Of a stretch of 64,000 bases of DNA, positions 13,801-63,200 are shown piece by piece. Position 1 is the first letter of the stretch, and each line of letters begins with the position of its first letter. Position numbers and translations under genes: made by a program. Below the pieces are notes generated by a model. It searched no databases and had not been told where the DNA came from. It was given only the letters and a program-made list of their open reading frames with translations. Origin of the DNA: Macrostomum lignano. Lineage: Eukaryota. The DNA lies in assembly GCA_002269645.1 (NCBI GenBank), contig NIVC01001296.1:1-64000 (forward strand), given 5' to 3'.

Positions 13801-14282
13801 ACTCGGCCCATGAAAGATGCTCTTATATTTAAAAAAGATAATGACCGTCCGTTGTTTAAAGTAACAAGCAGCTCTCTTGCAAAAACTCTTGTGCAAACCA
13901 CGGCCCCCATCCTGCTATTTTATCTGCTATTTTAATGCTGATAGCGTTTTATGTCGAATTTGATGACCGTTTTTGGGCCGGTCTATTGTTTGCATAGAAC
14001 AAGCCAGGGTCATTAAGCTCCTGTTTGATTTGTCTCCCCAACAGGCTTAGCGAAGTAGTTCGTACACGAAATTCCGCAAAGCTCTTGAATGGCAAAATAA
14101 ATGTACCGCTTAGCGAATACAAGTCACAGAGTACAAATGACAAAGCAAAACAAACACGCCAAAGTTCAACTGGGTGCAACTCAGAAACGACGGCACACGG
14201 ATAGACGAAATTCGTCTGGAAGATGACTCAAAGAGTCTCACATTCTTTAATGAGACTTAGGATTATTCAACCATTGATATGT

Positions 14283-15760: not shown

Positions 15761-16270
15761 ATAACTCTACCATCAATGTGCTCACCGAAGAGACAAAAGA
15801 GATGCACTATAATGGCTCAGATATCGGATGAAGGATACCAAACCAGAGAGATGGATGACTCAATCATCGCTAAGGTGCAAATCGACGAAAATAACCAATG
15901 AGATGATGACTCCAAAATCTCTAGTTTTAGACGATTGATTTCTATTATGAATAAATTAGTCAAGGAAAACTTGTTTCTAACTGCAACGAATTCGTTTGAG
16001 CTCAAAAAATGTGCTCACAAGTCCGCCAAAGCGACAAAAGCAACAACGGTCTGCCTTGCTACTTGCAGCAGCCAATGCAAAGCCTATCAATTTATTCAGC
16101 CACACAGTTTAGTTATATCGAAGCACAAATAGACTTAAGACAAGGATTAGGCCGGCTAGGAGAAGCGCAACGTTAAAAATGCTCAAGCCGAAACATATTT
16201 TGCCAGGTTTTCGACAAACACAAACTACTTTAAGTAGTCGAATAGAAAAAATGGCCTTTTTAGATGCTTG

Positions 16271-26522: not shown

Positions 26523-27420
26523 TCGCTTGAATTGCGTCTTCTTCGGATTTCGATGAAAATTAAAATTTATGATAAACTTAACAGTAACTTTTTGGATAAA
26601 GTTAAAATTAGCGAAAAATTATAGTATATATCGTTTTTTGCATATAACGACGAAAAAATATGACTTTGTTTTATTAGTTTTAGAAGCCTAATCAAAAATT
26701 TTCGACTTCTTCAGAAAGTAAAATATTTATTTGTTACTGACTTATCAAAAATAAAAAAACTGTTTCTTAGGCCCCTAATGAGTAATGAATAAGGTTTAAG
26801 TACCTCGCTCAGCATTTTAATCGAAGAATCAGATATTTTCAAATCGTATATACTAAAATCAGAGCTAAAAACCTTATCATGCTGATGCTCTCACTCAGTT
26901 AAACTTCTGAATTCACGTCACGATTCTTGAACCTGATTAGCTGAGTTCTTTAGTTGAGTTCTATGCTAAGCTAAGCTAGGTAGCTAGGCTTGGTCCTATG
27001 CGATAGTCTAGATCATTAATTTTTTATATTCTAGACCTATCTAACTGAATAAATTAAATGGTATAATGTCTAATGATTTTGTGAAAATTTTAGGGACCCT
27101 AGCCTAGACTGATCACTGATGACGATGTACTATGTAGAAAGTTATAGAAATTTTTAACTTACTAAGTTTTTAACTTTTATAGGGCCCAACCAAAATTTTT
27201 TTGAGGGGAGGGCCATAGTCAAGATCATGGCATGCCTGCACCAGAACAAAAATCCTATCAAAAAAGTGTGCTTGCACCATGCACTAGAACTATTACTATC
27301 AGATAAATGTGCTCTGGGTTTTTTTTTTCGCCAGAGATAAGGTGCGAAATCGCACCTTGTGCCAAATTTCAAGGTGCGATTTTAAGGCTCAGAGTGCAAT
27401 TTCTCTTGAGTCTTGTTTAG

Positions 27421-38112: not shown

Positions 38113-38447
38113 CAGTAGTTCGAAGTTGCACCTGTTTTTCTAATTTGTGTGTTTCCATACCTGTTCTGATCATCACTGCGTCATTAATTGGCTCTGTGTT
38201 GTTGAACAGCTTGCCATCCAATGCCTTTGTTTATATAGTTACTGCTCAGCCGCTACCATCTGCTCACAACTTTGAGCTTGCTGAGTTTTGTTGTGTCGCG
38301 ATTGTTTCAAGTTTAATCATCAGTGCATATATAAAATTACAAATGATTCTTTATTTTATATTCAGATTTTGCACGCAAATATGGGGGGTGATTATCAATC
38401 TAATAAGTATTGCTGATCTTAAATATATTTAAGATCTTAAAAAATAT

Positions 38448-39112
<665 letters not shown>

Positions 39113-39419
39113 GATAGGATAGATGTGTATTTAGATTTATTGATTAGTAAATTAGCTACTGGCAAGTGCGAACCCGGAAATTACCAGACATTATAACAAC
39201 GGTGAAGTAATTATTAATGTTTTAAAGTAAAAACTACTTAGATAATAAATGGTTACTCTTAAGAAATGTAGTAATATTTGGTTATCACTTTTATAACGAG
39301 TATTTACGAGTACTGTATTATTTTAGGCATTTGTTTTTACCGAAATTACCCTCAGAAGACCCTATGGCCTCTTTCTTACCTAGGAAACATTTTCTTCAAT
39401 TAATGAGCTTGATTGGCCA

Positions 39420-41173: not shown

Positions 41174-44100
41174 ATGAGTAGTGCAGCGGAGCTCAATTCA
41201 TCCTGCCCTGTTAGCGGTGGCGACGACTCGACTAACGGCGGTCAGCGCTGGTTGCCGCCTAATCATGACAGCCGGTGCACTTTTCGAATTGATAAGCCGG
41301 TCTGCGAATCGCCGCACTTGCATCAGAAGCGGTGAGTTGCGAGTGCACACTGTACTTTTTTGCGCTAAACGGGCTTTTAGTGGGTTTCAAACTAAATATA
41401 AATGTGTTTATCTGTAGAGGTGAGATCTCAGAAGTGTTTATTCTGTTCTGTAGATGGTGAGATTCCAGAACTGTTTATTCTGTAGAGGTGAGACTCCAGA
41501 AGTGTTTATTCTGTAGAGGTTGAGATTCCAGAAGTGTTTATTCTGTAGAGGTGAGACTCCAGAAGTGTTTATTCTGTAGAGGTTGAGATTCCAGAAGTGT
41601 TTATTCTGTAGAGGTTGAGATTCCAGAAGTGTTTATTCTGTAGAGGATGAGATTCCAGAAGTGTTTATTCTGTAGAGGATGAGATTCCAGAAGTGTTTAT
41701 TCTGTAGAGGATGAGATTCCAGAAGTGTTTATTCTGTAGAGGATGAGATTCCAGAAGTGTTTATTCTGTAGAGGATGAGATTCCAGAAGTGTTTATTCTG
41801 TAGAGGATGAGATTCCAGAAGTGTTTATTCTGTAGAGGATGAGATTCCAGAAGTGTTTATTCTGTAGAGGATGAGATTCCAGAAGTGTTTATTCTGTAGA
41901 GGATAAGATTCCAGAAGTGTTTATTCTGTAGAGGATGAGATTCCAGAAGTGTTTATTCTGTAGAGGTTGAGATTCCAGAAGTGTTTATTCTGTAGAGGAT
42001 GAGATTCCAGAAATGTTTATTCTGTAGAGGATGAGATTCCAGAAGTGTTTATTCTGTAAAGGTTGAGACTCCAGAAGTGTTTATTCTGTAGAGAATGAGA
42101 TTCAATAAGTGTTTATTCTGTAGAGGTTGAAATTCCAGAAGTGTTTATTCTGTAGAGGATGAGATTCAATAAGTGTTTATTCTGTAGAGGTTGAAATTCC
42201 AGAAGTGTTTATTCTGTAGAGGATGAGATTCCAGAAGTGTTTATTCTGTAGAGGTTGAGATTCCAGAAGTGTTTATTCTGTAGAGGATGAGATTCCAGAA
42301 GTGTTTATTCTGTAGAGGATGAGATTCCAGAAGTGTTTATTCTGTAGAGGTTGAGATTCCAGAAGTGTTTATTCTGTAGTGGGTGAGATTCGAGTGCTGC
42401 TTCCTAAACTCCCCGTCCCCCACTGTTCATTCCACGGCAGCAAGGAGCGGCCGAAGATTCTGCCCGACATACTGCATCACATTGGCAATACGCCTCTGGT
42501 CAGAGTTAACAATATCACTAAGGAGGAGGGCATCGAGTGCGAAATTTGTAAGCGTTTATTCTTGCTGAAGGACTATAATTGTGCGTGTATATTTTTAACA
42601 TTGATTTTCAATAACTGCCACTTGCAGTAGTAAAATGCGAATTTTTCAACGCCGGCGGATCAGTTAAAGATCGAATTGGGCTGCGCATGATTGAGGATGC
42701 CGAGAGGAGCGGCCGTTTAAAGCCTGGTGACGTGCTAATTGAGCCGACGTCTGGCAACACGGGTGAGTCTCCGCTCATGTACATTCCACTGCTGTGATGC
42801 CCCCGCTCATGTACATTCCACTGCTGTAATGTCCCCGCTCATGTACATTCCACTGCTGTTGATGTCCCCGCTCATGTACATTCCACTGCTGTAATGTCCC
42901 CGCTCATGTACATTCCACTGCTGTGATGTCCCCGCTCATGTACATTCCACTGCTGTGATGTCCCCGCTCATGTACATTCCACTGCTGTAATGTCCCCGCT
43001 CATGTACATTCCACTGCTGTTGATGTCCCCGCTCATGTACATTCCACTGCTGTAATGTCCCCGCTCATGTACATTCCACTGCTGTGATGTCCCCGCTCAT
43101 GTACATTCCACTGCTGTGATGTCCCCGCTCATGTACATTCCACTGCTGTGATGTCCCCGCTCATGTACATTCCACTGCTGTGATGTCCCCGCTCATGTAC
43201 ATTCCACTGCTGTGATGCCCCTGTTCCCAGCACATTCTACTGCTGTGATGCCCCTGTATTGCATATAGGTATAAAGGTGGTTGTAGCCTAGTGGTTAGAG
43301 CGTCGGATTCACGACTTGAAGGTCGTTGGTTCGATTCCCGATCCTACTGGAATAATTTGTGTCTTTTAGCAAGACACTTAACTCTGCATTGCTTCAGTTC
43401 AGCTGTAAAATGGGTACCAGTGTTTGCTGGGGTAATTGAGTTGTGTGGCGACCCCCCCCCAGTCCTTGGACTGAACAGCCGTACGCAGCCTTCAGATGCG
43501 CCGCCGCGCAATAGCTGCGGCTGAGCTGTCGGTTGCACAACTGGCAAATTAGGGCAGATGTAATCAATTATTATTACATGCATTATTGTTATATAGGTAT
43601 GAACATTTTAAGAAATGAAGTCTACGAAATGTTGTGAGCGGTGTCATAAAATTAAGATTGTAGGTTAGCTGCTAATATAAAGGATTTGTTCTGGAACTAT
43701 ACACGGCGCGTAATAATAGAAGATTGATTGATTAAGTGGCGCCAATACTGTTCTACTGTCATAAAATATAATTACACTTGTAAACTTATGCATACCCCAC
43801 TTTGCTAAGTCATCGGTGAAGTCATAAAAAGGGTTACTAGAAGGTCACTCAGCACCTATTAAGCCTTATTGTCTGGGGGTTGCAAGACAATTGACTGCTG
43901 AAAATTTAGGTATAGGGTTAAGGTTTGGAATAGAGTTTAGGTTAAGTTAGGGTTAGGTTTTAGGTTTTAGGTTAGAGTTATGGTTTCTAAGTTAGGGTTA
44001 TGGTTTTTAGGTTAGGGTTATGGTTTTTAGGTTAGGGTTATGTTTTCTAGGTTAGGGTTATGGTTTCTAGGTTAGGGTTATGGTTTTTAGGTTAGGGTTA

Positions 44101-47100
44101 TGTTTTCTAGGTTAGGGTTATGGTTTCTAGGTTAGGGTTATGGTTTTTAGGTTAGGGTTATGTTTTCTAGGTTAGGGTTATGGTTTCTAGGTTAGGGTTA
44201 TGGTTTTTAGGTTAGGGTTATGGTTTCTAGGTTAGGGTTATGGTTTCTAGGTTAGGGTTATGGTTTCTAGGTTAGGGTTATGGTTTCTAGGTTAGGGTTA
44301 TGGTTTCTAGGTTAGGGTTATGGTTTCTAGGTTATGGTTATGGTTTCTATGTTAGGGTTATGGTTTCTAGGTTAGGGTTATGGTTTCTAGGTTAGGGTTA
44401 TGATTTCTAGGTTAGGGTTAGGGTTAGGATTTTGATTTTAAGGTTAGGTTTACTTTACAGTTTAAAATTATGATTACTTAGGCACTTAGGTTAGGCATAG
44501 TCATTTATCGTATTCCTATTGTCTGGACATATCCGCACAAACTGTAATGATAATCTGTATTCTAATATTCAGCAAATTCTACAACCAGCTAATTAAGGGT
44601 CACGTGATTCGCCATTTATCGATACACAGTCATAATAACTGTCTTCTCTCTGTTAACTTGCTAATGCTAGTTGTATTTAAATAGTCAGTCATACGATTGT
44701 CTCGTCTTCCCCGCTGCTGCTGCCGCCGCCGCCGCCGCCACCGCAACCTCCGCTGTCGCAATTGTTGGCAAAGTGCACCTGCAGCTGCAATCCGCGTCTG
44801 GAGGCCACGGCAGATCGAACTGCTAGCGAAGGCCTGGGCATCTGCTGCTGCTGCTGCTGTTGAGAATCTTGACGCTGATCGGGCTGCGTCAGGTTGCACT
44901 CGCTGACGGCCGAGCGCACCCGCCGACCTCCGATGCTGCCGTGCAGCTGGCAGACCGCCAGCGACTCCCCACCCGGAAGTGAATCGAAGCCACCGGCTTG
45001 ACTGGAAATGTCGCTTGTCGGCGGGGTGCGGATGCCGCCGCAGGTGGGGCACAGGCCGCCAGTGCTGCTGCAGCAGTCCTGCCTCCGCCGCTGTCTCTGC
45101 CGCTGCTGCCGCCTCTTCGCCGTGCTGCCGACTGGCAACGGCGAGGTGGCGGAAGCGGCCGTTGCTGCTGTCGCTGCTGCCGTGGCCGCCGCCGACGCGG
45201 AAGCGGCCGCTCGGGCAGTCCGCACCTGCGCCAGCCCGGCCAGCAGCAGCAGCAGCAGGGCGGCCGCTGACACGCCAGCGAAGGCTCTCATCAGAACGGC
45301 GGCGTCGTCAAATTCAATGCGGGACAGGTGCGGCGGCAGCGGCGGCCGATGGTTGGCCTCCCCGCCGCCCTGAAGTCCGCCGCTGGTCCCCGCGCCAGCC
45401 AGGCCGCCGCCTGCCCTGTTGACGCCTGTGCAGTAGTCAGTCCGGCAGTTGATCTCATAGGAGGTGTACTGTAACAAGCTGCTGGTATTGACCAGGTAGT
45501 TCAGGTGCAGATAATCAAGCGAGCACAGGGCGCCCATAGCCGACGGTTCAGCGGCCAGCTCAGCCTGCTGCCTGTACACTATGCACATTCGGTGCACATA
45601 GCTTGGCGGCGACTTGCACGGGACAGGGTAGCCCTTGCTGCCCGGCTCTACCGATCGGTCTCGGAATAGGCAGCTGAACTGCTCTCCGTTGTCATGGTTA
45701 CCAACAGTGCCAGCTTCGGGCTGCTGTTGCTGCATCTCCATCCGATCGTTGCACATTGGCCGATCTCTGCAATACTTAATGGTCACATTGTACTCTGACG
45801 GGTTCGGCTGTCGTTTAGCGCACAGTCTGTGCAGCAACAATTGGCGACCGTGGGCGTCGATGTACATCAACGAGGCGCAGCCGTGCTGGCACAGTTGCGG
45901 ACGGAACACCTCGGTGCGGTTGCAGCCGCCTAGGCGGTCGCATCGACCGGTTAGACAGGGCACGGCTGCTGTCGCTTTGGATTTGGCAGCGTCCTCGGCT
46001 GCTGCTGCCGACTTGATTATCGTGACTTGAGTAGTTCGCGCCGGCATGTGCGACAGCGCGGCCAGCAGCAGGACGGCTATTAAGGCTGGAAGATGTCCGC
46101 TCATGCCTCGCTTGCTGCGTTGGGGCTCGTCTGCAGTGTTCAGTTATGGAGTTTGGCTCGGTTCTTGCTTGCCCTATTCTTGCATCTGGCGTCCTGTGCT
46201 CTCATCACCCAGTCTCTGCTACTCCCATCATCCTGTCTCTGCTACTCACACCATCCTGTCTCTTTTACTCCCACCATCCTGTCTCTGCTACTCCCACCAT
46301 CCTGTCTCTGCTACTCCCACCATCCTGTCTCTGCTACTATCACCATCCTGTCTCTGCTACTCCCATCATCCTGTCTCTGCTACTCCCACCATCCTGTCTC
46401 TGCTACTCCCACCATCCTGTCTCTGCTACTCCCACCATCCTGTCTCTGCTACTATCACCATCCTGTCTCTGCTACTCCCATCATCCTGTCTCTGCTACTC
46501 CCACCATCCTGTCTCTGCTACTCCCACCATCCTGTCTCTGCTACTCCCACCATCCTGTCTCTGCTACTCCCATCATCCTGTCTCTTTTATTCTGATCATC
46601 CTGTCTCTTTTACTCCCACCATCCTGTCTCTGCTACTCCCACCATCCTGTCTCTGCTACTCCCACCATCCTGTCTCTGCTACTCCCATCATCCTGTCTCT
46701 TTTACTCCCACCATCCTGTCTCTGCTACTCCCATCATCCTGTCCCTGCTACTCTCACCATCCTGTCTCTGCTACTCCCATCATCCTGTCTCTGCTACTCC
46801 CATCATCCTGTCTCTGCTACTCCCACCATCCTGTCTCTGCTACTCCCACCATCCTGTCTCTGCTACTTCCACCATCCTGTCTCTGCTACTCCCACCATCC
46901 TGTCTCTGCTACTTCCACCATCCTGTCTCTTTTACCTTGTCTTTTACCTCCCATTATCTTGTCTTCTATATATTGATAATTATTGCAATAGTTGCTAATG
47001 TCTATTATGAATACTTTTAGTATTTAACACACCGTGGCATTTAGCGCGTTGATTCACAGTTTTTTTTCACTAAAGGAGAGGGGGCCTTTTTCGGTCCAAC

Positions 47101-50100
47101 ATTTATTTCTCTGTTGTAGCGATGGACTGGATGAAAGGTGCTGATTAGGGTTGCAGTTCCGGGACTGTAGTAGACCCATGTGGTAGTGCTTGTGTGTTTT
47201 TTAGTGTGCCTACTACCTACCTCCAAGACCCTCTCTCTCTCTCTCTCGGTTTTTTCTCAGTCCTTAGCCGACAATCGGAATGACTGATGATTGCCCTTAT
47301 TCTAATGAATTATTAATTAGCTGATGAGGTGTGCGGCTAGCTAGTTGATTTTTTGCTACTATTGAGTTGGTTATATACCTTGTAGGGTGTGCTGTTCTTT
47401 TTTTGTGAGCTGGTGCCGCGCACGTGAGGCGTTGTTACACGCCAAACTGTACTAGCTAGTAATGCTAACTAACACGAGGGTTAGTCAGTAGCTGCGCCGG
47501 TTCAAGTTTACTGTTTTCAGGGGTCAACTAAGGGATGTAAAAAATGGCTGTAGGTGCCCCACTCCAAACAGAATAAACTGGGGCTGTAGGTGCGCCACTC
47601 CAAACAGAATAAACTGGGGCTGTAGGTGCCCCACTCCAAACAGAATAAACTGGGGCTGTAGGTGCCCCACTCCAAACAGAATAAACTGGGGCTGTAGGTG
47701 CCCCACTCCAAACAGAATAAACTGGGGCTGTAGGTGCCCCACTCCAAACAGAATAAACTGGGGCTGTAGGTGCCCCACTCCAAACAGAATAAACTGGGGC
47801 TGTAGGTGCCCCACTCCAAACAGAATAAACTGGGGCTGTAGGTGCCCCACTCCAAACAGAATAAACTGGGGCTGTAGGTGCGCCACTCCAAACAGAATAA
47901 ACTGGGGCTGTAGGTGCGCCACTCCAAACAGAATAAACTGGGGCTGTAGGTGCCCCACTCCAAACAGAATAAACTGGGGCTGTAGGTGCCCCACTCCAAA
48001 CAGAATAAGCTGGGGCTGTAGGTGCCCCACTCCAAACAGAATAAGCTGGGGCTGTAGGTGCCCCACTCCAAACAGAATAAACTGGGGCTGTAGGTGCCCC
48101 ACTCCAAACAGAATAAACTGGGGCTGTAGGTGCCCCACTCCAAACAGAATAAACTGGGGCTGTAGGTGCCCCACTCCAAACAGAATAAACTGGGGCTGTA
48201 GGTGCCCCACTCCAAACAGAATAAACTGGGGCTGTAGGTGCCCCACTCCAAACAGAATAAACTGGGGCTGTAGGTGCCCCACTCCAAACAGAATAAACTG
48301 GGGCTGTAGGTGCCCCACTCCAAACAGAATAAACTGGGGCTGTAGGTGCCCCACTCCAAACAGAATAAACTGGGGCTGTAGGTGCCCCACTCCAAACAGA
48401 ATAAACTGGGGCTGTAGGTGCCCCACTCCAAACAGAATAAACTGGGGCTGTAGGTGCGCCACTCCAAACAGAATAAACTGGGGCTGTAGGTGCCCCACTC
48501 CAAACAGAATAAACTGGGGCTGTAGGTGCGCCACTCCAAACAGAATAAACTGGGGCTGTAGGTGCCCCACTCCAAACAGAATAAACTGGGGCTGTAGGTG
48601 CCCCACTCCAAACAGAATAAACTGGAGCTTCATACTCGTAAGTACAAGCACCTAAATACACAAGCAGGACTTACCAATGTGAATCGCTTCTTTATATATT
48701 GTTGATAAGTATTTAAAGCATTATAAAAATGTTTACGTCTGGCCGGCTAAAATGTAGAGCTTTGGTTCAGAGCAAAGTTAAAATGCTTATAGCATGCTAT
48801 TCTGAGCAAAACATGCATGGGTTTAGTACTACCAACTTATTAGGTAGTGGCTGAGCACTGCCCGCGGAGCTGATTCTGATTGGCTTACCAGATTGAAGAT
48901 AGAAAAAAGGCAGATGGCAATGCCGCATAGTACTGTGGTGTGTATGCTCACGGCTAAGAATTGATTGTCCTTCTGTGCCTCCATTTCTGTCTTCACCAGT
49001 TGATGAAGGCTTGGACCGCTGGGGGCTCTTGACGGATGAGGCGGGACGGGTGGAGTAGAGTGAAGCTTAGGTTTAGTTTCAGCTCCTTCCTCCTTGAGCA
49101 GTCTCCGGTCTTCAATGCCTGTTTGTCCGTTCATTTCTAGCATCTCATCTTCTCACCTTACTATCTGTTCGCGTATGCCTCATCAGGAACTGCTGGGTGC
49201 TGCTCTTGCAAATTGTGTCTAACTCATATACGACAGTAGTGCAGTAATGTGTCAGTAGCTAAGTAGAATGTTCAAGGCTCACTGATTAAACATTTAACAG
49301 ATGACATGAGCTGCACTATCAGGTGCTGTTTTCCATGGCTGCTGCTGTTCGTGACCAGAGTGGGCAATACAGTATTAAATTCTTCTATCTATCAATCATT
49401 GGTCCCCTCTATTGTCGCTAGATAGAAAATTGAATCAATCGCATTTTTACTGATTTCATTTGAGCAGTGCTGGGGTCACTAGCTACTGATTGCTTTAGTG
49501 CCAAGGCAGTCCAATTTTGAGCATTTGATTTCATTTTAGCGAGTTCAATAGCTTCATTTACTCATTATTTTGCCTGACAAGCGTGATTTTTGCCCGACTG
49601 GCCCTAATGAAGCGAGGCGCAAAGTTTCTCACTTTATTGGCTTGTGTCTTGTTAGCTTCACTTTGCCGACACGATTCAAGTTGACTGCATTAGAGACCTC
49701 CGGTTATTCTACAATTCAAAAGAAGAGACTTGGAGAGAGAAGAGAGGAGAAAGAATAGAGGAGACAGATGAGAGATGAGACAGGGAGGAGAGAGAAGAAA
49801 GGGGAGTGAAGAAAGTGAGCTGATTCGGTGTTAGAGCTTGTACGATGCCACACGGCCTAACTGTTGAAGAAGATACCAACCCAAGTGTTGAAAGCATTTG
49901 TGGTTTCTACACTGGATTACGAGTAGGATTTCAGTCCCATTATATCCCATGCTTGTTGTCCCTGTCTCTCTGCCGTACGGGCTGAGCAAACACGCCAGAC
50001 TCTGTGCTAATATGTTCGCGCTGCAACTCTGAGCCCGGGCTTCCTAAACCATTTGGGACAGCACTCTCTTGCCTGCCTGTCAAATCCTGGCGTCTGCGAT

Positions 50101-53100
50101 CCCTATAGGCCTCTTAGTTTTTGTTCCTGAACTCCCTGGCACGTGGCCTGCATTCTATCCCATCCCATCATTCCCCAAGGTGGTCTCTAGTGAGGGTGTC
50201 ATTGTCTTTTAACATCTAATGATCGCTACAGGTTGACATCTACCCGGGTATTGATTATTATGCTTTTTTTCTTCGTCGCTATTGGACAGAGTCAGTCTGT
50301 ATTCTGAGCCTCTCTATCAGCAGTCGGACAGAGTCAGTGTGTATTCTGAGCCTCTCTATCAGCAGTCGGATAGAGTCAGTGTGTATTCTGAGCCTCTCTA
50401 TCAGCAGTCGGATAGAGTCAGTGTGTATTCTGAGCCTCTCTATCAGCAGTCGGACAGAGTCAGTGTGTATTCTGAGCCTCTCTATCAGCAGTCGGACAGA
50501 GTCAGTGTGTATTCTGAGCCTCTCTATCAGCAGTCGGACAGAGTCAGTGTGTATTCTGAGCCTCTCTATCAGCAGTCGGATAGAGTCAGTGTGTATTCTG
50601 AGCCTCTCTATCAGCAGTCGGACAGAGTCAGTGTGTATTCTGGCATTCCCAGATATATCAGGAAATATATTATAGAGCAATTGTTTCAGAAATTGTAGCT
50701 TTAAAAAGGAGCGAGCAGTTCGTTGCAGCTTGTGTCTATTTTTCGTCTTCCATATTTAGCTGGGGAAAAACATTTTCCCAAACGCTTGCACGGTGACAAC
50801 TCAGCTTCCCCATGGCGTTTCCTGAGCTGATGTCGTGCCCATTGTTTTAAGTCTTTTTTCTTTCATGTTTTTTGCTGCTGAATTTCTGCTGGCTACAAAA
50901 AATAAAATTAATTTCTGCTGCGAGTTAGGACTTTTGTTTGGTTGCACTTTTGTGTACCGGCTTGCTTGACATTCAACGATTTGCCTTAGCTGATGGGGAT
51001 TTACCACCATTGCTGATGGGGATTTACCACCATTGCTGATGGGGATTTACCACCATTGCTGATGGGGATTTACCATTGCTGATGGGGATTTACCACCATT
51101 GCTGATGGGGATTTACCACCATTGCTGATGGGGATTTACCATTGCTGATGGGGATTTACCATTGCTGATGGGGATTTACCACCATTGCTGATGGGGATTT
51201 ACCACCATTGCCGATGGGGATTTACCACCATTGCTGATGGGGATTTACCACCATTGCTGATGGGGATTTACCACCATTGCCGATGGGGATTTACCACCAT
51301 TGCTGATGGGGATTTACCACCATTGCTGATGGGGATTTACCACCATTGCTGATGGGGATTTACCACCATTGCTGATGGGGATTTACCACCATTGCTGATG
51401 GGGATTTACCACCATTGCTGATGGGGATTTACCATTGCTGATGGGGATTTACCATTGCTGATGGGGATTTACCACCATTGCTGATGGGGATTTACCACCA
51501 TTGCTGATGGGGATTTACCACCATTGCTGATGGGGATTTACCACCATTGCCGATGGGGATTTACCACCATTGCTGATGGGGATTTACCACCATTGCTGAT
51601 GGGGATTTACCACCATTGCTGATGGGGATTTACCACCATTGCTGATGGGGATTTACCATTGCTGATGGGGATTTACCACCATTGCTGATGGTGATTTACC
51701 ACCATTGCTGATGGGGATTTACCACCATTGCTGATGGTGATTTACCACCATTGCTGATGGGGATTTACCACCATTGCTGATGGTGATTTACCACCATTGC
51801 TGATGGGGATTTACCACCATTGCTGATGGGGATTTACCATTGCTGATGGTGATTTACCATTGCTGATGGTGATTTACCACCATTGCTGATGGGGATTTAC
51901 CACCATTGCTGATGGGGATTTACCATTGCTGATGGGGATTTACCACCATTGCTGATGGGGATTTACCATTGCTGATGGTGATTTACCATTGCTGATGGTG
52001 ATTTACCATTGCTGATGGGGATTTACCATTGCTGATGGGGATTTACCATTGCTGATGGGGATTTACCATTGCTGATGGTGATTTACCATTGCTGATGGTG
52101 ATTTACCATTGCTGATGGGGATTCACCATTGATAATGGGGATTTACCATTGCTGATGGTGATTTACCATTGCTGATGGTGATTTACCATTGCTGATGGTG
52201 ATTTACCATTGCTGATGGCGATTTACCATTGCTGATTAGGATTTACCATTGCTGATGAGGATTTACCATTGCTGATGGGGATTCACCATTGCTGATGAGG
52301 ATTTACCATTGCTGATTAGGATTTACCATTGCTGATTAGGATTTACCATTGCTGATTAGGATTTACCATTGCTGATTAGGATTTACCATTGCTGATTAGG
52401 ATTCACCATTGCTGATTAGGATTTACCATTGCTGATTAGGATTTACCATTGCTGATTAGGATTTACCATTGCTGATTAGGATTTACCATTGCTGATGGTG
52501 ATTTACCACCATTGCTGATGGGGATTTACCACCATTGCTGATGGGGATTTACCATTGCTGATGGTGATTTACCACCATTGCTGATGGGGATTTACCATTG
52601 CTGATTAGGATTTACCATTGCTGATGGGGATTTACCATTGCTGATGGGGATTTACCATTGCTGATGGGGATTTACCATTGCTGATGGTGATTTACCACCA
52701 TTGCTGATGGGGATTTACCATTGCTGATGGTGATTTACCATTGCTGATGGTGATTTACCATTGCTGATGGGGATTTACCATTGCTGATGGGGATTTACCA
52801 TTGCTGATGGGGATTTACCATTGCTGATGGTGATTTACCATTGCTGATGGGGATTTACCATTGCTGATGGGGATTCACCATTGATAATGGGGATTTACCA
52901 TTGCTGATGGTGATTTACCATTGCTGATGGTGATTTACCATTGCTGATGGTGATTTACCATTGCTGATGGCGATTTACCATTGCTGATGGGGATTTACCA
53001 TTGCTGATGAGGATTTACCATTGCTGATGGGGATTCACCATTGCTGATGAGGATTTACCATTGCTGATTAGGATTTACCATTGCTGATTAGGATTTACCA

Positions 53101-56100
53101 TTGCTGATTAGGATTTACCATTGCTGATTAGGATTTACCATTGCTGATTAGGATTCACCATTGCTGATTAGGATTTACCATTGCTGATTAGGATTTACCA
53201 TTGCTGATTAGGATTTACCATTGCTGATTAGGATTTACCATTGCTGATGGTGATTTACCACCATTGCTGATGGGGATTTACCACCATTGCTGATGGGGAT
53301 TTACCATTGCTGATGGTGATTTACCACCATTGCTGATGGGGATTTACCATTGCTGATTAGGATTTACCATTGCTGATGGGGATTTACCATTGCTGATGGG
53401 GATTTACCATTGCTGATGGGGATTTACCATTGCTGATGGTGATTTACCATTGCTGATGGGGATTTACCATTGCTGATGGGGATTCACCATTGATAATGGG
53501 GATTTACCATTGCTGATGGTGATTTACCATTGCTGATGGTGATTTACCATTGCTGATGGTGATTTACCATTGCTGATGGTGATTTACCATTGCTGATGGT
53601 GATTTACCATTGCTGATGGCGATTTACCATTGCTGATGGGGATTTACCATTGCTGATGAGGATTTACCATTGCTGATGGGGATTCACCATTGCTGATGAG
53701 GATTTACCATTGCTGATTAGGATTTACCATTGCTGATGGGGATTTACCATTGCTGATGGGGATTTACCATTGCTGATGGGGATTTACCATTGCTGATGAG
53801 GATTTACCATTGCTGATTAGGATTTACCATTCTCAAATGAGGATTTACCATTGCTGATTAGGATTTACCATTGCTGATTAGGATTTACCATTGCTGATTA
53901 GGATTTACCATTGCTGATTAGGATTTACCATTGCTGATTAGGATTTACCATTGCTGATTAGGATTTACCATTGCTGATTAGGATTTACCATTGCTGATTA
54001 GGATTTACCATTGCTGATTAGGATTTACCATTGCTGATTAGGATTTACCATTGCTGATTAGGATTTACCATTGCTGATTAGGATTTACCATTCTCAAATG
54101 AGGATTTACCACTGTCAATTTGAGAACAAAGAACAAAACATGGGTCATACTGCTATCTGAGCTCAGCTTACCAACTATCGCTAGATGCTGCGGAGGTCCA
54201 TAGTGACACTTTCGCACTGATGTGGAACTCCCATCGTCTACCCGGGACATATCTCCCTCCCAAGGGGCCTCTGGGGTTAACTGGGCCAACTAGAGGGGAC
54301 ATATTTGAGTCGAATAGTATCCCTTGTCTACCCTACTCCCAACCTCCCCATCTCAGACCGCGGGAAGGATGCAGCAGGCCTTCTCAACTTGTGATTGATC
54401 GGATCGTTTGCTCCAGACTTTGGGAAATCGATCTGCTTTTCCTTACTTCGTTCGTCCGTTGCTTTTTTAACTTTGCTTTCTTTAAGTAGACCAATCTTTT
54501 AACTCTTCTGCTGACTCAACCCGCTGCAGGAATCGGCCTGGCTCTGGCTGCTGCTGTCAAAGGCTACCGCTGCACCATTGTCATGCCGGAGAAGATGAGC
54601 AAGGAGAAGGTGATGCGCCACCGCCAGACTTCACAGATCCCCAGTTTCTGAGCCAGCCTCCCAGATCCCCAGTTTCTGGGCCAGCCTTCCAGATCCCCAG
54701 TTTCTGGGCCAGCCTCCCAGATCCCCAGTTGCTGGGCCAGCCTCCCAGAGCCTCAGTTGCTGGGCCAGCCTCCCAGATCCTCAGTTGCTGGGCCAGCCTC
54801 CCAGATCCTCAGTTGCTGGGCCAGCCTCCCAGATCCTCAGTTGCTGAACCAGCCTCCCAGATCCCCAGTTGCTGGGCCAGCCTCCCAGAGCCCCAGTTGC
54901 TGGGCCAGCCTCCCAGATCCTCAGTTTCTGGGCCAGCCTCCCAGATCCTCAGTTGCTGGAACAGCCTCCCAGATCCTCAGTTGCTGGGCCAGCCTCCCAG
55001 ATCCTCAGTTGCTGAACCAGCCTCCCAGATCCCCAGTTGCTGGGCCAGCCTCCCAGAGCCCCAGTTGCTGGGCCAGCCTCCCAGATCCTCAGTTGCTGAA
55101 CCAGCCTCCCAGATCCTCAGTTTCTGGGCCAGCCTCCCAGATCCTCAGTTGCTGGAACAGCCTCCCAGATCCTCAGTTGCTGGGCCAGCCTCCCAGATTC
55201 TCAGTTGTTGGACCAGCCTCCCAGATCCTCAGTTGCTGTGGCACTAGCCTCCCAGATCCTCAGTTGCTGGGCCAGCCTCCCAGATCCTCAGTTGCTGGAC
55301 CAGCCTCCCAGATCCTCAGTTGCTGGACCAGCCTCCCAGATCCTCAGTTGCTGGGCCAGCCTCCCAGATCCTCAGTTGCTGGGCCAGCCTCCCAGATCCT
55401 CAGTTGCTGGACCAGCCTCCCAGATCCTCAGTTGCTGGGCCAGCCTCCCAGATCCTCAGTTGCTGGGCCAGCCTCCCAAATCCTGTTTAGGACCCTCTAC
55501 TATCCTCGCGATTTTCCTAGACAGCATCTCGCCCCCTCTTATGCTGACCGTCAGGTCGACGTTCTGCGCGCCCTCGGCGCCGACATCGTCCGCACGCCGA
55601 CGGCGGCCAGCTACGACAGCGCCGAGTCGCACATCGGCGTTGCCAAGCAGCTGCTGAACACCGTGGCCAATTCGCACATCCTTGATCAGTACACCAACCC
55701 CTCCAACCCGATGGCCCACTTCGACGGTGAGTTTCACGTTTTATACTGCTGGATGTCATTTGCAATTTAGAGGCTGACTATTCTACCAACCCACTCATAG
55801 TAGATTTTGTATTAATCACTCACATTCCACCTATATAATCATTCATAATTTACCTGTCAATCACTCGTAATTCACCTGTCAATCACTCATAGGCCACCTG
55901 GCAATCACTCATAGTCTACCTGTCAATCACTTACATTCTACTGTCCATCACTCCACTCCACCTGTCAATCACTTACCTTTCACCTGTTCAATCATTCACG
56001 TTCCTACTCCAGGCACAGCCGAGGAGATCCTGGAAGCGTGCTCCGGTCAGCTGGACATGGTGGTGCTTGGCGCTGGCACAGGCGGCACCCTGTGCGGAGT

Positions 56101-60239: not shown

Positions 60240-63200
60240 TGTTTTGATGTACTGCACTGCACCTGACTCACCTGAGTCCAATTATGAGTAACTCTAACTA
60301 GCCAGCCAGCCTAACTAACCAAACCGGCCTACTCCGGTGTACGCTGCTCTGCGTACTTTTTCTCTCTCTCCCCCTTGACATGATAATATTCAGTAGTGAT
60401 CGATTCTGAGTTTTAAGCCCACTTACTTGTTGTCTTTTAAGCCTATATATTGGTCTCGCCACCTACCACCTCGTATCTCACAATCATTGCAATAATTCGC
60501 TCATCTCAAATACACAACTTCGTACTTGACTCAAACCAAGCTCACGGGCGGCCTTGTCATCGTTTACTGGGCGCGACTTGACAATGGCGTCGCAAGCAAA
60601 CAACTCCGAACTAAACTTGGATGACCCAGACACAGCCGAAGCCTGGCTGCTCAGCTTTGCGGCTGCCGCACGAACCAAGAAACTGACGGACACAGAAGAA
60701 GATCGGCAGATCACCGATCTATTCCTCGCCAGGGCAGGTCTCAAGGCACTGAGAACGCTGTCCCTCATGGCTGCCCCGACCAGCCTGGAGAAAAAAACAT
60801 TTGAACAAATTCGAGACATCATCAAGGAGACAATCCGGCCCAAGAAGCGCCTCGATATTGCCGAACGAGCAAAATTCCTCGCCCTCAGGCAGGACCCAAG
60901 CGAAAGTGTCGCCTCCTACTACCGCCGACTCCGTGCAGCAGCGGCTACGTGTAGCTTTGAGAAGCTCGGGACGAAACAGTCAAGCGAGGACGAGCTCATC
61001 ACCATGCGGCTCGTGGACGGACTCGCCTCTGTGGACCACAAACATAGACTGTTGGAGAGAATGCAAGCTACCGACATGCTGCTGAACGAGGTGCTGCAAA
61101 CACTTGAGCAACTTGAGCAAATCCGCTGCTACAACACCAGCACCGGGGCCGCTGCCAACACCGAGGCCAGCATCGCCTATGCAGGGCGGCGCGGCACGCC
61201 CCCACAGCCAGCGCCGGACACCAGACCACCGAGGAACATCAGCAAGACGAAGTGCCAATATTGCGGCGGTTTGCACCAGCAAGGCGCATGCCCTGCGTTC
61301 GGCAAGCGGTGCACCGCCTGCAACAAGAAAAACCACTTCGCTGCCGTATGCAGGTCCCGCACCGTGCATCTAGAGACCTGGGAGGAGAACGAAGGCGCCG
61401 ATATGGAGCGAGATACTGCCAACGTCTTCGTCATCAGACCAAAGCGCAGAGAGCGGAACGGCATCTTCCGGCAGGTAAAAATCAACGGCAAGGAGCTGCA
61501 AATGCAGGTAGATACGGGCGCTGATGTGAGTCTCATTCCACGGGGCCACTGGGAGACACTTGGATGCCCAGCACTGAGGAAATCCAGACGAATTCCGAGA
61601 CAGTTCGACGGATCGATCATAAAAACCCTGGGAGAGTTCACTGCCACGTGGGATGACCAAGAAAAGTTCCGCACAGTCGACTTGGTGGTCACAGCAGCGC
61701 GCAAGTCACATGGACTGCTGGGTCTTGACAATCTGGATTGGAACCCCGAAGGCCAGGCAGCCAGTGCTCAGGATTCCGTAGTTCAACATCTCGATTGTCT
61801 GAAAGGCTTCCAGGCCAGGATCAAGCTGATTGAGGGTGCCAAGCCTTTCTACTGCGCAGCCAGAGCAGTGCCGCTGCACCTGCGTGACCGCGTCAATCAG
61901 GAGCTAAAGCGTCTCGTGACTGAGGGCATCATCGAGCCGGTGACGGAGGGCGGCAGCGAATGGGCGTCCCCGATCGTCTGCGTCCTAAAACCTAATGGCA
62001 ATGTCAGAATTTGCGCCGACTACAAAGCGGGGGTCAACCATCAGGTGTGCGGGGACACCTACCCCATGCCAACCGTCGAAACGATCTTCTCGGACGTTGC
62101 CGGAATGACTGACTTTGCCACTCTCGACCTATCTGACGCCTACTTACAGATCGAGCTCGAGGAGAAGAGCAGGGAGGTCACCACGATTGCAACTCCTTTA
62201 GGGCTGTTCCGCTACACCCGACTAGTGCCTGGCCTCAAGTCAGCATCCGCCATCTTTCAAAAGGCAATGGAGACCACCCTCGAGGACGTAAGCGGCAAGG
62301 TCATTTATCAAGACGACATCCTTATCGGAGGTCAATCTGCCGAGGGTCTCAAGGCCAAAGTTGATGAAGTAATCAAGACCCTACAGGCGGCCGGCATGAA
62401 TATAAATCTCGCCAAATCCAACCTGGGGGCCAAGACAGTCAAGTTCCTGGGCTACAGAATCAGCGCAGACGGAATCTCGCCAGACCCCGGCCTGGTCAGC
62501 AAAATCATGGAGATCTCCGCGCCACGCGACCGTCGCCAGTTAGAGTCGTTCCTTGGTCTCTGCAATTTCTTCGGAAGGTTTGTCAACAACTATGCGCACG
62601 TTGTCGAGCCTTTGAACCAGCTGCGCAAGAAGGGAGCGGAGTTTGTGTGGGGAGCTGCGCAAGAAGCGGCCTTCCACCAGCTGAAGAAGCTGCTGAGCTC
62701 CGGCCCGATCATCCAGCCTTATGACCGAGCCAAAGAGACAACGCTGACGACAGACGCCAGTGAAAAGGCGGTGGCCGCCGTGCTCACGCAGGAAGGGCAC
62801 CCCGTCATCTACTTCAGCCGGCGATTGACACAGGCGGAGGCGCGCTACTCCAACATCGAGCGGGAGGCTCTGGCGATTGTTTGGGCGATGGAGAGGGCTC
62901 GACAGTTCCTTCTAGGCAAGCGTTTCATACTGCGAACGGACCACCGCCCTCTAGAGTTCCTGTTTGGAACAAGACAACAACTCCCCAAGGTCGCCAACGC
63001 TCGACTGCTTCGCTGGGCCATCCGCCTCATGGGGTTCGACTTCGCAATTGAGTACGTCCGAGGAGCCCAAATTCCGCACGCCGATGCGCTCTCCCGGCTC
63101 GACTTTGCCGACGTTCCGGACGACCAGGCTGAAGCTGCGACTCACCACCACCACCTGGTGCATTGGGCTGGTGAAAGCGTCATTGGTTGGAATGAGCTAG

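What the first reader, a model, noticed from the sequence alone, without database searches (positions are those of the whole stretch)
44689..46104. Nested antisense gene for a kinase-less, tandem three-finger receptor-like protein
Single-exon 471-aa type I membrane protein: two Cys modules ending CxxxxxCN and CxxDYCT, like Ly6/Quiver or activin-receptor ectodomains; then a TM helix, a basic stretch, a Cys cluster ([14 protein letters not shown]) and a class I PDZ motif ETIV. Established: most Ly6 proteins are GPI-anchored; TGF-beta receptors have one module plus a kinase; BAMBI is a one-module kinase-less decoy. A two-module, TM, PDZ-tailed form fits none exactly. Inference: an uncharacterised decoy/co-receptor or ion-channel auxiliary subunit. 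Best candidate for novelty in this window.
Basis: partly seen in the sequence, partly recalled or inferred. Interest (0 to 1): 0.7.

Follow-up and report, generated by a model that had tools for sequence, protein, structure and literature searches.

The report
Unannotated flatworm cysteine-rich membrane protein gene
A real but never-annotated gene of the flatworm Macrostomum lignano lies backwards inside an intron of the cystathionine beta-synthase gene and encodes a lineage-restricted, cysteine-rich single-pass membrane protein with a scaffold-binding (PDZ-type) tail. The proposed three-finger (Ly6/activin-receptor-like) fold could not be confirmed.

Summary
The window is the first 64 kb of M. 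lignano contig NIVC01001296.1. Bases 44689-46104 (-) hold a 471-codon single-exon ORF, antisense inside an 11.8-kb intron of the CBS gene. It encodes a signal peptide, an 8-Cys module (ends C-x5-C-N), a 6-Cys module (ends C-x4-C-T), one TM helix, a polybasic stretch and a C-terminal ETIV.

It is very probably a real gene:
- It is longer than any ORF in 1000 shuffles.
- Its codon usage matches neighbouring exons.
- It sits in the same intron in all three homeologous loci.
- A 29%-identical paralog lies next to the paralogous CBS gene, with the same 8+6 Cys framework, sequon, TM, poly-Arg and C-terminal DTFV.
- dN/dS among homeologs is 0.2-0.45, only in this frame.

No source calls either gene, and neither has a detectable homolog in 1.8-5.8 billion proteins, Pfam or PDB.

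The three-finger reading is unproven. The "absolutely conserved" Ly6 C1-X-X-C2 motif is absent, and profile-profile probabilities are below 1%, where genuine divergent LU domains give 6-13%. The AlphaFold models are unusable (pLDDT 33-45).

Best reading: an orphan, PDZ-tethered type I surface glycoprotein family. Transcription is untested. Interest is modest.

The parts
44689..46104 (-). Complete single-exon CDS (471 codons plus TGA stop) of the 'type A' gene
   Evidence: Beats 1000/1000 shuffles. Codon usage matches the window's exons. Present in three homeologous loci with dN/dS 0.31-0.44.
46027..46104 (-). Signal-peptide-like N-terminus (residues 1 to about 26, [26 protein letters not shown])
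   Evidence: Hydropathy peak at residues 1-22. The paralog also starts with a hydrophobic leader. The cleavage site is inferred; no signal-peptide predictor was run.
45748..45957 (-). Cys module 1: residues 50-119, 8 Cys, spacing 4,5,10,3,18,16,5, ends Y-C-RDRPM-C-N
   Evidence: The paralog has 8 Cys with spacing 5,10,5,3,18,14,5 and ends Y-C-RHRAD-C-N. Smith-Waterman z = 10.3 against shuffles.
45427..45672 (-). Cys module 2: residues 145-226, 6 Cys, spacing 17,10,19,25,4, ends C-RTDY-C-T
   Evidence: The paralog has 6 Cys with spacing 9,6,11,25,5 and ends C-RDRPM-C-T. z = 9.9, and 5.6 with Cys masked.
45481..45495 (-). Conserved LVNTS N-glycosylation sequon (N206) in module 2
   Evidence: Identical pentapeptide in both paralogs. 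Unchanged in all homeologs.
45229..45297 (-). Single transmembrane helix (residues about 270-292)
   Evidence: Kyte-Doolittle 19-residue windows reach 2.35. The paralog has an equivalent helix at about residues 322-347.
45079..45117 (-). Polybasic stretch [13 protein letters not shown] (residues 330-342), cytoplasmic side
   Evidence: The paralog has TRRRRLRAAHRRRRRQRQ directly after its TM. By the positive-inside rule this implies an N-out/C-in topology (inference).
44692..45228 (-). Low-complexity cytoplasmic tail (residues 293-471: Ala-, Gln- and Gly-rich, with scattered Cys)
   Evidence: Not alignable to the paralog's tail (z = 2.8). dN/dS is 0.53-0.84 in A and 0.13-0.20 in B.
44692..44703 (-). 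C-terminal E-T-I-V, a class I PDZ-ligand-type motif (X-S/T-X-hydrophobic-COOH)
   Evidence: The paralog ends DEDTFV in 3/3 copies.
46131..46136 (-). CTGCAG, a candidate (trans-)splice acceptor 26 nt upstream of the ATG
   Evidence: Matches the published M. lignano SL acceptor consensus [T/C]TNCAG (PMC8629364). Conserved in all A copies. The B copies have TTGCAG 15 nt upstream of their ATG. Use of the site is inferred, not shown.
42627..42764 (+). Host gene: CBS exon upstream of the intron that hosts the ORF
   Evidence: tblastn with human CBS, 85% identity over residues 106-151.
54556..54612 (+). Host gene: next CBS exon, closing the ~11.8-kb host intron
   Evidence: tblastn. Same arrangement in L003 and L004.
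43951..44425 (.). 20-bp minisatellite (GGTTAGGGTTATGGTTTCTA) bounding the gene's 3' flank
46212..46930 (.). 23-bp minisatellite bounding the gene's 5' flank, starting 108 bp upstream of the ATG

Best explanation
This is a genuine, previously uncalled, single-exon protein-coding gene of Macrostomum lignano. It lies antisense inside intron 3 of a cystathionine beta-synthase gene.

It belongs to a small lineage-restricted family. Two anciently diverged paralog types, A and B, are each linked to one of the two CBS paralogs, and each is present in three homeologous copies.

The product is a type I membrane glycoprotein. A cleavable leader is followed by two independently folding, disulfide-rich extracellular modules (8 and 6 Cys) joined by a polar linker. 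Then come one TM helix, a poly-Arg/Gln stop-transfer stretch and a long disordered low-complexity tail. The tail's last residues (E/D-T-hydrophobic-V-COOH) form a class I PDZ ligand.

Inferred mechanism: the ectodomain binds an extracellular or cis partner. The C-terminus tethers the protein to a PDZ scaffold of the Dlg/PSD-95/Scribble type at a junction, synapse or other membrane subdomain. This is how Crumbs, neurexins, syndecans or glycophorin C are positioned.

What is shown: the gene's reality, the purifying selection and the conserved architecture. What is inferred: the topology and the PDZ tethering. The fold of the modules (possibly degenerate three-finger/LU-like) and the ligand remain open.
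For: ORF and coding signal:
- The ORF and its anatomy are as described.
- It is longer than any ORF in 1000 shuffles.
- GC3 is 0.73, equal to neighbouring exons, and only this frame has a positive codon log-odds.
- The window is identical to contig NIVC01001296.1.

Paralog B:
- The ORF at L002 25186-26646(-) shows the same order of signal peptide, 8-Cys module ending YCRxRxxCN, 6-Cys module ending CT, LVNTS sequon, TM, poly-Arg, poly-Q and C-terminal DTFV.
- Ectodomain Smith-Waterman z = 15. Each module separately gives z of about 10.

Homeologs:
- A copies lie in the same CBS intron in L003 and L004.
- B copies are intact in 3/3 loci.
- dN/dS is 0.31-0.44 for A (p = 0.009 and 0.065) and 0.20-0.23 for B (p = 0.002 and 0.0004).
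- Omega is about 0.8-4.5 in the other frames. The one exception is the stop-ridden antisense frame that shares wobble positions.
- No ectodomain Cys, the sequon or the C-terminal motif is altered in any copy.
- All indels outside homopolymers are multiples of 3.
- dN of about 1.1% compares with about 2-3.3% non-coding divergence between the same loci.

Why it may be unannotated: the GenBank annotation excluded transcripts overlapping repeats (PMC5730564), which can explain the absence.

Upstream signal: an SL-acceptor consensus lies just upstream of the ATG in all six copies.
Against: - No transcript or protein evidence could be consulted.
- Neither paralog is called in the record or is present in 15 billion predicted proteins.
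- As assembled, two of the three A copies carry 1-bp deletions that truncate them to 404 and 270 aa. Both lie in 4-base homopolymers and are private to one copy, so they may be long-read consensus errors. They could equally be real decay of redundant copies.
- Substitution counts are small (19-24 per pair), and the pairs are not independent.
- The A tail has omega up to 0.84.
- A four-residue PDZ motif is weak evidence on its own.
- No canonical AATAAA follows the stop.
Confidence: 0.6

Rival explanations
1. The two modules are true three-finger (Ly6/uPAR or TGF-beta-receptor-type) domains. The protein would then be a kinase-less, TM-anchored tandem three-finger receptor, decoy or co-receptor.
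For: - Module 1 has 8 Cys in 69 residues, which can be mapped onto the LU scheme 1-5, 2-3, 4-6, 9-10 with 7-8 missing. That is the pattern of the N-terminal LU domains of uPAR, C4.4A, Haldisin and schistosome Sm29/SmLy6D (PMC6600238; PMC4492491).
- It ends Y-C-x5-C-N with a non-glycosylatable Asn in both paralogs.
- Module 2 (6 Cys) could parallel Haldisin D1, which lacks both 2-3 and 7-8.
- The only hhalign matches are to the C-terminal CC-x4-CN motif of the LU and ActRII profiles.
- The low-confidence AF2 models are all-beta, with a hairpin between C76 and C95.
Against: - C1-X-X-C2, called absolutely conserved in Ly6, is C-x4-C or C-x5-C here.
- C4-x3-C5 is shorter than usual.
- Module 2 ends in Thr, although Asn 'invariably' follows Cys10.
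- Pfam gives no hit even per module at E <= 10.
- PDB profile searches give no hits.
- hhalign probability is 0.3-0.9% over 5-16 columns. Controls: uPAR D1 12.6%, uPAR D2 6.2%, LU against receptor profile 26%, typical LU 83-97%.
- The two modules are not detectably similar to each other.
- The gene is single-exon, whereas LU genes typically have three exons.
- Structure prediction is uninformative (pLDDT 33-45) and Foldseek returns noise.
Confidence: 0.3
2. The ORF is not a functional gene. It would be a chance or decaying open frame in a GC-rich, low-complexity island of the CBS intron: a pseudogene or a relic of a duplicated gene.
For: - It is uncalled in the transcriptome-based annotation.
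- It has no homolog anywhere.
- 2/3 A copies are frameshifted as assembled.
- Other frames of this GC-rich DNA also hold ORFs of 120-147 aa.
- The A tail is nearly neutral (omega 0.53-0.84).
Against: - 0/1000 shuffles reach the ORF's length.
- Frame-specific omega is 0.2-0.45 in both paralog types.
- All 14 ectodomain Cys, the sequon, the TM, the poly-Arg and the C-terminal T-x-V are kept across about 70% sequence divergence.
- B is intact in 3/3 copies.
- The frameshifts lie in homopolymers.
- The annotation filter removed repeat-overlapping transcripts.
Confidence: 0.1
3. It is a transposon- or virus-derived envelope-like glycoprotein gene. Envelope proteins are also type I Cys-rich membrane proteins, and this one could have been carried into the CBS region by a mobile element.
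For: LTR-retrotransposon ORFs (gag/protease/RT/integrase) occur near both paralogs: window about 60.7-64 kb, and L002 12096-15287.
Against: - The ORFs lie 10-15 kb from those elements, and in B on the opposite strand.
- They are not flanked by LTRs in the stretches examined.
- There are no paralogous copies elsewhere in about 270 kb of fetched loci beyond the syntenic ones.
- There are no hits among billions of predicted proteins, which a multicopy element would give.
- The ectodomain has no furin-type site or heptad-repeat region (sequence inspection).
Confidence: 0.03

Closest known systems
Multi-LU-domain Ly6/uPAR proteins (uPAR, C4.4A/LYPD3, Haldisin/LYPD5; schistosome Sm29/SmLy6D)
   Same: - Signal peptide followed by tandem small disulfide-rich modules.
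- The first module has 8 Cys that can be mapped as 'LU minus the 7-8 disulfide'.
- C-x(4-5)-C-N ending.
- Membrane-attached surface glycoprotein.
- Sm29 shows that flatworms have a two-domain form (PMC6600238, PMC4492491).
   Different: - No C1-X-X-C2.
- Module 2 lacks the terminal Asn.
- No Pfam or HH profile similarity.
- Anchored by a TM helix with a 179-aa cytoplasmic tail and a PDZ motif, not by GPI.
- Single-exon gene.
TGF-beta/activin/BMP receptor ectodomains and the kinase-less pseudoreceptor BAMBI
   Same: - Type I membrane protein with a Cys-rich ectodomain ending ...C-x(4-5)-C-N just before a linker and the TM.
- No kinase, as in BAMBI.
   Different: - Two modules rather than one.
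- No Activin_recp or BAMBI Pfam match.
- hhalign probability 0.5-0.9%.
- The tail has no GS, kinase or BAMBI-type domain and is low-complexity.
PDZ-tethered single-pass surface proteins (Crumbs, neurexin/Caspr, syndecans, glycophorin C, nectins). This is a functional analogy from established knowledge.
   Same: - Type I topology.
- Basic juxtamembrane stretch plus a C-terminal PDZ ligand.
- E/D-T-x-V resembles the E-S/T-x-V preference of Dlg/PSD-95 PDZ domains.
   Different: - Unrelated ectodomains.
- No sequence homology.
- PDZ binding was not tested.
- The tail is much longer and of low complexity.

Membership tests
Ly6/uPAR (LU) domain family (PF00021) | 60-110-residue module with 10 canonical Cys (8 if the 7-8 or 2-3 pair is lost) | tested here: inconclusive
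   Module 1 has 8 Cys in 69 aa. Module 2 has 6 Cys in 81 aa. Both paralogs agree. The counts are compatible with uPAR-D1-type and Haldisin-D1-type erosion, but Cys counts alone do not define the fold.
Ly6/uPAR (LU) domain family (PF00021) | N-terminal C1-X-X-C2 spacing ('absolute conservation', PMC4492491) | tested here: not met
   Module 1 has C-x4-C in A and C-x5-C in B. Module 2 has no C2.
Ly6/uPAR (LU) domain family (PF00021) | Non-glycosylated Asn directly after the last Cys, with C9-C10 spacing of 3-5 | tested here: inconclusive
   Module 1 meets it in both paralogs (C-x5-C-N-D/Q). Module 2 does not: it has C-x4/5-C-T in both.
Ly6/uPAR (LU) domain family (PF00021) | Detectable profile similarity to LU domains | tested here: not met
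   Pfam gives 0 hits at E <= 10, for the whole protein and per module. hhalign against a verified 6-member LU profile gives probability 0.43% for module 1 and 0.31% for module 2, over 5-10 columns. Leave-one-out controls give 6-97% over about 70 columns.
Ly6/uPAR (LU) domain family (PF00021) | Three-finger beta fold with disulfides 1-5, 2-3, 4-6, (7-8), 9-10 | tested here: inconclusive
   AF2 single-sequence models have pLDDT 32.8 (both modules) and 44.5 (module 1). The best Foldseek E-value against PDB is 1.4, with no three-finger hit. No deeper MSA was obtainable.
Ly6/uPAR (LU) domain family (PF00021) | Secreted or GPI-anchored (C-terminal hydrophobic signal at the very end) | tested here: not met
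   The hydrophobic helix at 270-292 is followed by 179 further residues. The paralog's helix is followed by 139.
TGF-beta receptor superfamily / BAMBI | Single Activin_recp-type ectodomain (PF01064) or BAMBI N-terminal domain | tested here: not met
   No Pfam hit. hhalign against the ACVR2A/2B/BMPR1A/TGFBR1 profile gives probability 0.87% and 0.54%, matching only the C-terminal CN motif. There are two modules rather than one.
TGF-beta receptor superfamily / BAMBI | Cytoplasmic GS/Ser-Thr kinase domain, or the BAMBI-type intracellular domain | tested here: not met
   The tail (residues 329-471 scanned alone, and the full-length protein) gives no Pfam hit at E <= 10. Its composition is Ala/Ser/Gly/Gln/Arg-rich.
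Class I PDZ-ligand-bearing membrane proteins (functional class) | Free C-terminus X-[S/T]-X-[V/I/L] | tested here: met
   ETIV in A and DTFV in 3/3 B copies, each preceded by acidic residues, although the tails are otherwise unalignable.
Class I PDZ-ligand-bearing membrane proteins (functional class) | Actual binding to a PDZ domain | not testable with these tools
   Needs peptide/PDZ binding assays or co-folding with M. lignano Dlg/Scribble-type PDZ domains.

The most novel reading that the evidence does not exclude
The A/B genes are founding members of a fifth architectural class of three-finger (LU) proteins. The four recognised classes are secreted, GPI single-domain, GPI multi-domain and TGF-beta-receptor kinases. 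This class would be tandem, 7-8-less LU modules on a transmembrane stalk, with a PDZ-scaffolded, kinase-less tail. Such a protein could be a flatworm-lineage co-receptor or junctional/synaptic organiser. It would also show that LU domains can drift beyond all sequence-profile detection, losing even C1-X-X-C2.
Probability: 0.2. Interest if true: 0.5.

Novelty: new variant of a known kind. Interest (0 to 1): 0.3.

Why it matters
M. lignano is a transgenic, RNAi-tractable model for regeneration and stem cells. Here a conserved, selected gene family (at least six loci) is missing from its public annotation and from every protein database searched. The likely cause is that its members are single-exon, antisense or intron-nested, and hemmed in by minisatellites that the annotation pipeline filtered on.

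This is a concrete example of how repeat filtering hides real genes, and of a taxonomically restricted surface receptor with a clear, testable handle: the conserved PDZ-type C-terminus. If the modules prove to be three-finger domains, it would extend the architectural range of that superfamily. Otherwise it is one more orphan membrane protein, useful for annotation but not surprising.

Tried and rejected
Searches that found nothing:
- Word-indexed search with the full protein gave nothing. It was probably swamped by poly-Q/A/G words, so I repeated it with an ectodomain profile. That also gave nothing, not even self.
- Exhaustive phmmer of residues 45-235 against 1.84 billion representatives gave 0 hits at E <= 1e-3.
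- Exact look-up found the product not on record.
- Pfam gave 0 hits at E <= 10, for the whole protein, per module and for the tail.
- PDB phmmer returned only low-complexity noise.
- PDB profile searches for the ectodomain and for each module gave 0 hits.
- Rfam on 38-56 kb found nothing.
- Look-up of the UniRef-only CBS copy P0002 found it not on record.

Structure:
- AlphaFold2 without an MSA, for both modules and for module 1 alone, gave unusable models.
- Foldseek on the better one returned noise.

Internal comparisons:
- Module 1 against module 2 shows no detectable similarity.
- There is no paralog inside the window.
- A tail-to-tail alignment picks up only poly-R/poly-Q, so the 'Cys cluster' is not a conserved feature.
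- MAFFT mis-registered module 2, so I used hand-anchored alignments for hhalign.

Readings considered and rejected:
- TNFR, EGF/laminin-EGF, PSI, Apple and Frizzled-type Cys patterns. Their spacings do not fit and Pfam gives no hit.
- A retroelement envelope origin (see rivals).
Full report
**1. Observation**

The ORF is exactly as reported: window 44689..46104, minus strand, ATG start, 471 codons (sequence). Its anatomy:
- A hydrophobic N-terminus.
- Eight Cys between residues 50 and 118, ending C112-RDRPM-C118-N.
- Six Cys between 145 and 225, ending C220-RTDY-C225-T.
- N-x-S/T sequons at 62, 106 and 206.
- One strong hydrophobic helix at about 270-292.
- [13 protein letters not shown] (330-342), then [14 protein letters not shown].
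- Low-complexity Ala/Gln/Gly tracts and a C-terminal ETIV.

The open frame is not a by-product of GC-rich DNA. It runs 484 stop-free codons, against a mean of 159 and a maximum of 346 in 1000 dinucleotide shuffles of the island between the two flanking minisatellites. GC1/2/3 is 0.64/0.56/0.73, against 0.64/0.42/0.73 for bona fide exons of the window. Only this frame has a positive codon-usage log-odds.

**2. Where it is**

The window is eukaryotic and full of 20-40-bp minisatellites. It carries these genes:
- An S8e/NSA2-like gene.
- ETF-beta.
- A mariner-like transposase remnant.
- ANKRD13 (+).
- Cystathionine beta-synthase (CBS, +).
- An LTR-retroelement fragment.

A rough join of the CBS exons hits M. 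lignano protein PAA69733.1. The DNA around the ORF is 100% identical to contig NIVC01001296.1 of assembly GCA_002269645.1, with identical coordinates.

CBS exons lie at 41249-41323, 42451-42555 and 42627-42764, and resume at 54556. The ORF therefore sits antisense in an ~11.8-kb CBS intron, so 'nested antisense' is correct. It is bounded by minisatellites at 43951-44425 and 46212-46930. The record calls no gene there.

**3. Is it a gene?**

Searches for homologs found nothing (details in 'tried and rejected'):
- The word-indexed search of 5.8 billion proteins, with the full protein.
- The exhaustive phmmer of the ectodomain against 1.84 billion representatives.
- Pfam, whole protein and per module.
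- PDB sequences.

The product itself is not on record.

Synteny rescued the analysis. The locus of the paralogous CBS gene (71% identical; L002, NIVC01000433.1) contains an uncalled 486-codon ORF on the minus strand, about 6.5 kb downstream of CBS. It matches residues 45-228 of the query. This 'type B' protein repeats the whole architecture:
- Leader.
- 8-Cys module, spacing 5,10,5,3,18,14,5 against 4,5,10,3,18,16,5, ending YCRHRADCN against YCRDRPMCN.
- Polar linker.
- 6-Cys module ending CRDRPMCT against CRTDYCT.
- An identical LVNTS sequon.
- TM helix.
- TRRRRLRAAHRRRRRQRQ.
- Poly-Q.
- C-terminal DEDTFV against EDETIV.

The ectodomains are homologous beyond doubt. Smith-Waterman gives 113 against 32.5 +/- 5.4 for shuffles (z = 15). 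Each module separately gives z of about 10. Module 2 still gives z = 5.6 with all Cys masked. The tails are not alignable (z = 2.8, driven by poly-R/Q). That makes the shared acidic-T-hydrophobic-V terminus more telling. It also shows that the juxtamembrane Cys cluster is not a family feature.

**4. Selection**

The assembly is redundant because M. lignano is a hidden polyploid (PMC5730564). Cluster look-up gave two more copies of each CBS locus, and all four were retrievable.

- Type A lies in the same CBS intron in L003 and L004.
- Type B is intact in L005 and L006 (493 and 495 aa, same C-terminus).

| Pairwise Nei-Gojobori dN/dS | Type A | Type B |
|---|---|---|
| Whole ORF | 0.31-0.44 | 0.20-0.23 |
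| Signal, ectodomain and TM | 0.22-0.29 | 0.24-0.33 |

Variable sites by codon position are [6,8,13] for A and [3,5,18] for B.

As a control, the same calculation in the other five frames gives omega of 0.75-4.5. The only exception is the antisense frame that shares wobble positions, which is full of stops. Binomial tests for an excess of synonymous change give p = 0.009 and 0.065 for A, and p = 0.002 and 0.0004 for B. Non-coding divergence between the homeologous loci is about 2-3.3%, similar to dS of 3-3.5% and well above dN of about 1.1%. None of the 14 ectodomain Cys, the sequon or the C-terminal motif differs in any copy.

Caveats:
- Counts are small and the pairs are not independent.
- As assembled, L003 and L004 carry 1-bp deletions that truncate A to 404 and 270 aa.
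- Both deletions are in 4-base homopolymers (CCCC to CCC, GGGG to GGG) and each is private to one copy. All other indels are 3, 6, 9, 12 or 27 bp.
- I read the deletions as probable long-read consensus errors, but real decay of redundant copies cannot be excluded.

**5. Why unannotated, and is it transcribed?**

The GenBank annotation is transcriptome-derived. [quoted passage not shown] A gene 108 bp from one minisatellite and 263 bp from another, with internal poly-Q/Ala/Gly tracts, is the kind that would be lost. Absence from the annotation is therefore weak evidence against expression.

Both paralog types have an exact match to the published SL trans-splice acceptor consensus [T/C]TNCAG just upstream of the ATG. 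It is CTGCAG at 26 nt in A and TTGCAG at 15 nt in B, conserved in all six copies (PMC8629364). This is suggestive only. I could not consult RNA data, so transcription remains untested.

**6. What fold?**

The LU review defines the domain as follows (PMC6600238):
- 60-90 residues with 10 Cys paired 1-5, 2-3, 4-6, 7-8 and 9-10.
- An invariant non-glycosylated Asn after Cys10.
- N-terminal LU domains of uPAR, C4.4A and Haldisin lack 7-8, and Haldisin D1 also lacks 2-3.

The schistosome Ly6 paper adds an 'absolutely conserved' C1-X-X-C2. It also describes Sm29/SmLy6D as a GPI-anchored double-domain protein whose first domain lacks C7-C8 (PMC4492491).

Module 1 can be mapped as LU-minus-7-8 and has the C-x5-C-N ending. 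But it has C-x4/5-C at the start. Module 2 ends in Thr.

I verified recalled human CD59, LYNX1, SLURP1, uPAR D1-D3, ACVR2A/2B, BMPR1A and TGFBR1 ectodomains against PDB. I built LU and receptor profiles from them and ran hhalign with Cys-anchored alignments of each module:

| Comparison | Probability | Columns aligned |
|---|---|---|
| Module 1 or 2 vs LU profile | 0.4% / 0.3% | 5-10 |
| Module 1 or 2 vs receptor profile | 0.9% / 0.5% | 9-16 |
| CD59, LYNX1, SLURP1, uPAR D3 (leave-one-out) | 83-97% | about 70 |
| uPAR D1 (leave-one-out) | 12.6% | about 73 |
| uPAR D2 (leave-one-out) | 6.2% | about 72 |
| LU vs receptor profile | 26% | 44 |

The module matches are confined to the terminal C...CN motif. 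AlphaFold2 without an MSA gave pLDDT 32.8 (both modules) and 44.5 (module 1), with beta strands only. Foldseek against PDB gave noise. The three-finger assignment is thus a reasonable hypothesis from Cys arithmetic. It fails one stated defining feature and has no statistical or structural support here. I put it at about 0.3.

**7. Mechanism**

Shown:
- A conserved, selected ORF.
- Its conserved order of leader, two Cys modules, sequon, TM, basic stretch and T-x-V end.

Inferred from established rules:
- The leader plus the positive-inside rule give an N-out/C-in type I topology.
- The sequons imply glycosylation, and the Cys modules are disulfide-bonded extracellular binding units.
- A free X-S/T-X-V terminus preceded by acidic residues is the preferred ligand of Dlg/PSD-95-type class I PDZ domains.

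The tail therefore most likely tethers the protein to a PDZ scaffold at a membrane subdomain. The long disordered tail would act as a spacer. The ligand, tissue and process are unknown.

**8. Comparison, novelty and verdict**

The closest architectures are multi-LU GPI proteins (uPAR, C4.4A, Haldisin, Sm29) and kinase-less BAMBI. It is a demonstrable member of neither. Functionally it resembles PDZ-tethered single-pass surface proteins.

It is an undescribed, lineage-restricted family: at least two paralog types, each in three homeologous copies, each linked to a CBS paralog. Nesting is specific to type A. The equivalent CBS intron in the B loci is only about 40 bp.

Orphan membrane proteins are common in flatworms, so the surprise value is modest. 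The main practical point is a real gene family missing from the annotation of a model organism.

- Interest: 0.3.
- Probability that it is a real gene: about 0.8-0.85.
- Probability of the PDZ-tethered type I receptor reading: about 0.6.
- Probability of a three-finger fold: about 0.3.

Noticed in passing
window 60683-63973 (+); L002 12096-15287 (+): LTR-retrotransposon-type ORFs (gag, zinc knuckle, aspartyl protease, RT, integrase by Pfam). They sit inside an intron of the type-B CBS gene in L002. A 27-34%-identical relative lies just downstream of CBS in the window.
   Followed up: partly
window 23906-24981 (+): Mariner/Tc1-like transposase split over two ORFs (HTH_48, then a weak DDE_3 match below Pfam's cutoff). 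Probably a decayed copy.
   Followed up: partly
window 42764-54556 vs L002 11075-11117: The CBS intron that hosts the type A gene is ~11.8 kb and mostly minisatellites (for example a 20-mer x150 at 50978-54111). The equivalent intron of the paralogous CBS gene is only about 40 bp. There the type B gene lies outside CBS, about 6.5 kb downstream and also antisense. Nesting is therefore not ancestral to the family, or was lost in B.
   Followed up: partly
window 43951-44425: A 20-bp minisatellite (GGTTAGGGTTATGGTTTCTA, about 24 copies) containing the TTAGGG telomere-type hexamer lies interstitially, right at the gene's 3' flank.
   Followed up: no
L003 ~14330 and L004 ~13850 (codons 360 and 238 of the A ORF): Single-base deletions in CCCC and GGGG runs, each private to one homeolog. 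They would truncate the protein to 404 aa, or to 270 aa just before the TM. They are either assembly errors or real decay of redundant copies.
   Followed up: partly
window 46131-46136 (-); L002 ~26662-26667 (-): Exact matches to the M. lignano SL trans-splice acceptor consensus [T/C]TNCAG lie 26 nt (A) and 15 nt (B) upstream of the start codons. The published SL ends in ATG. In B that ATG would be in frame with the ORF. In A it would open a short upstream ORF overlapping the start codon.
   Followed up: partly
L002 20168-23172 (-), L006 20524-23590 (-), L005 16667-19531 (-): A called gene (324, 324 and 268 aa; no Pfam family) lies about 2 kb downstream of the type B ORF on the same strand, separated mostly by a 16-bp tandem repeat. 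The two could share a transcription unit or operon.
   Followed up: no
window 2868-5551 (-): Three ORFs of 161-240 aa with no Pfam match, one ending in a long Arg/Lys/Gln-rich tract. They may be exons of another unannotated or orphan gene.
   Followed up: no
window 14223-15901, 38437-39165, 47517-48661, 54729-55770: Long 'ORFs' in several frames on both strands that are just translations of minisatellite arrays. They are artefacts to ignore in any ORF-based scan of this genome.
   Followed up: yes
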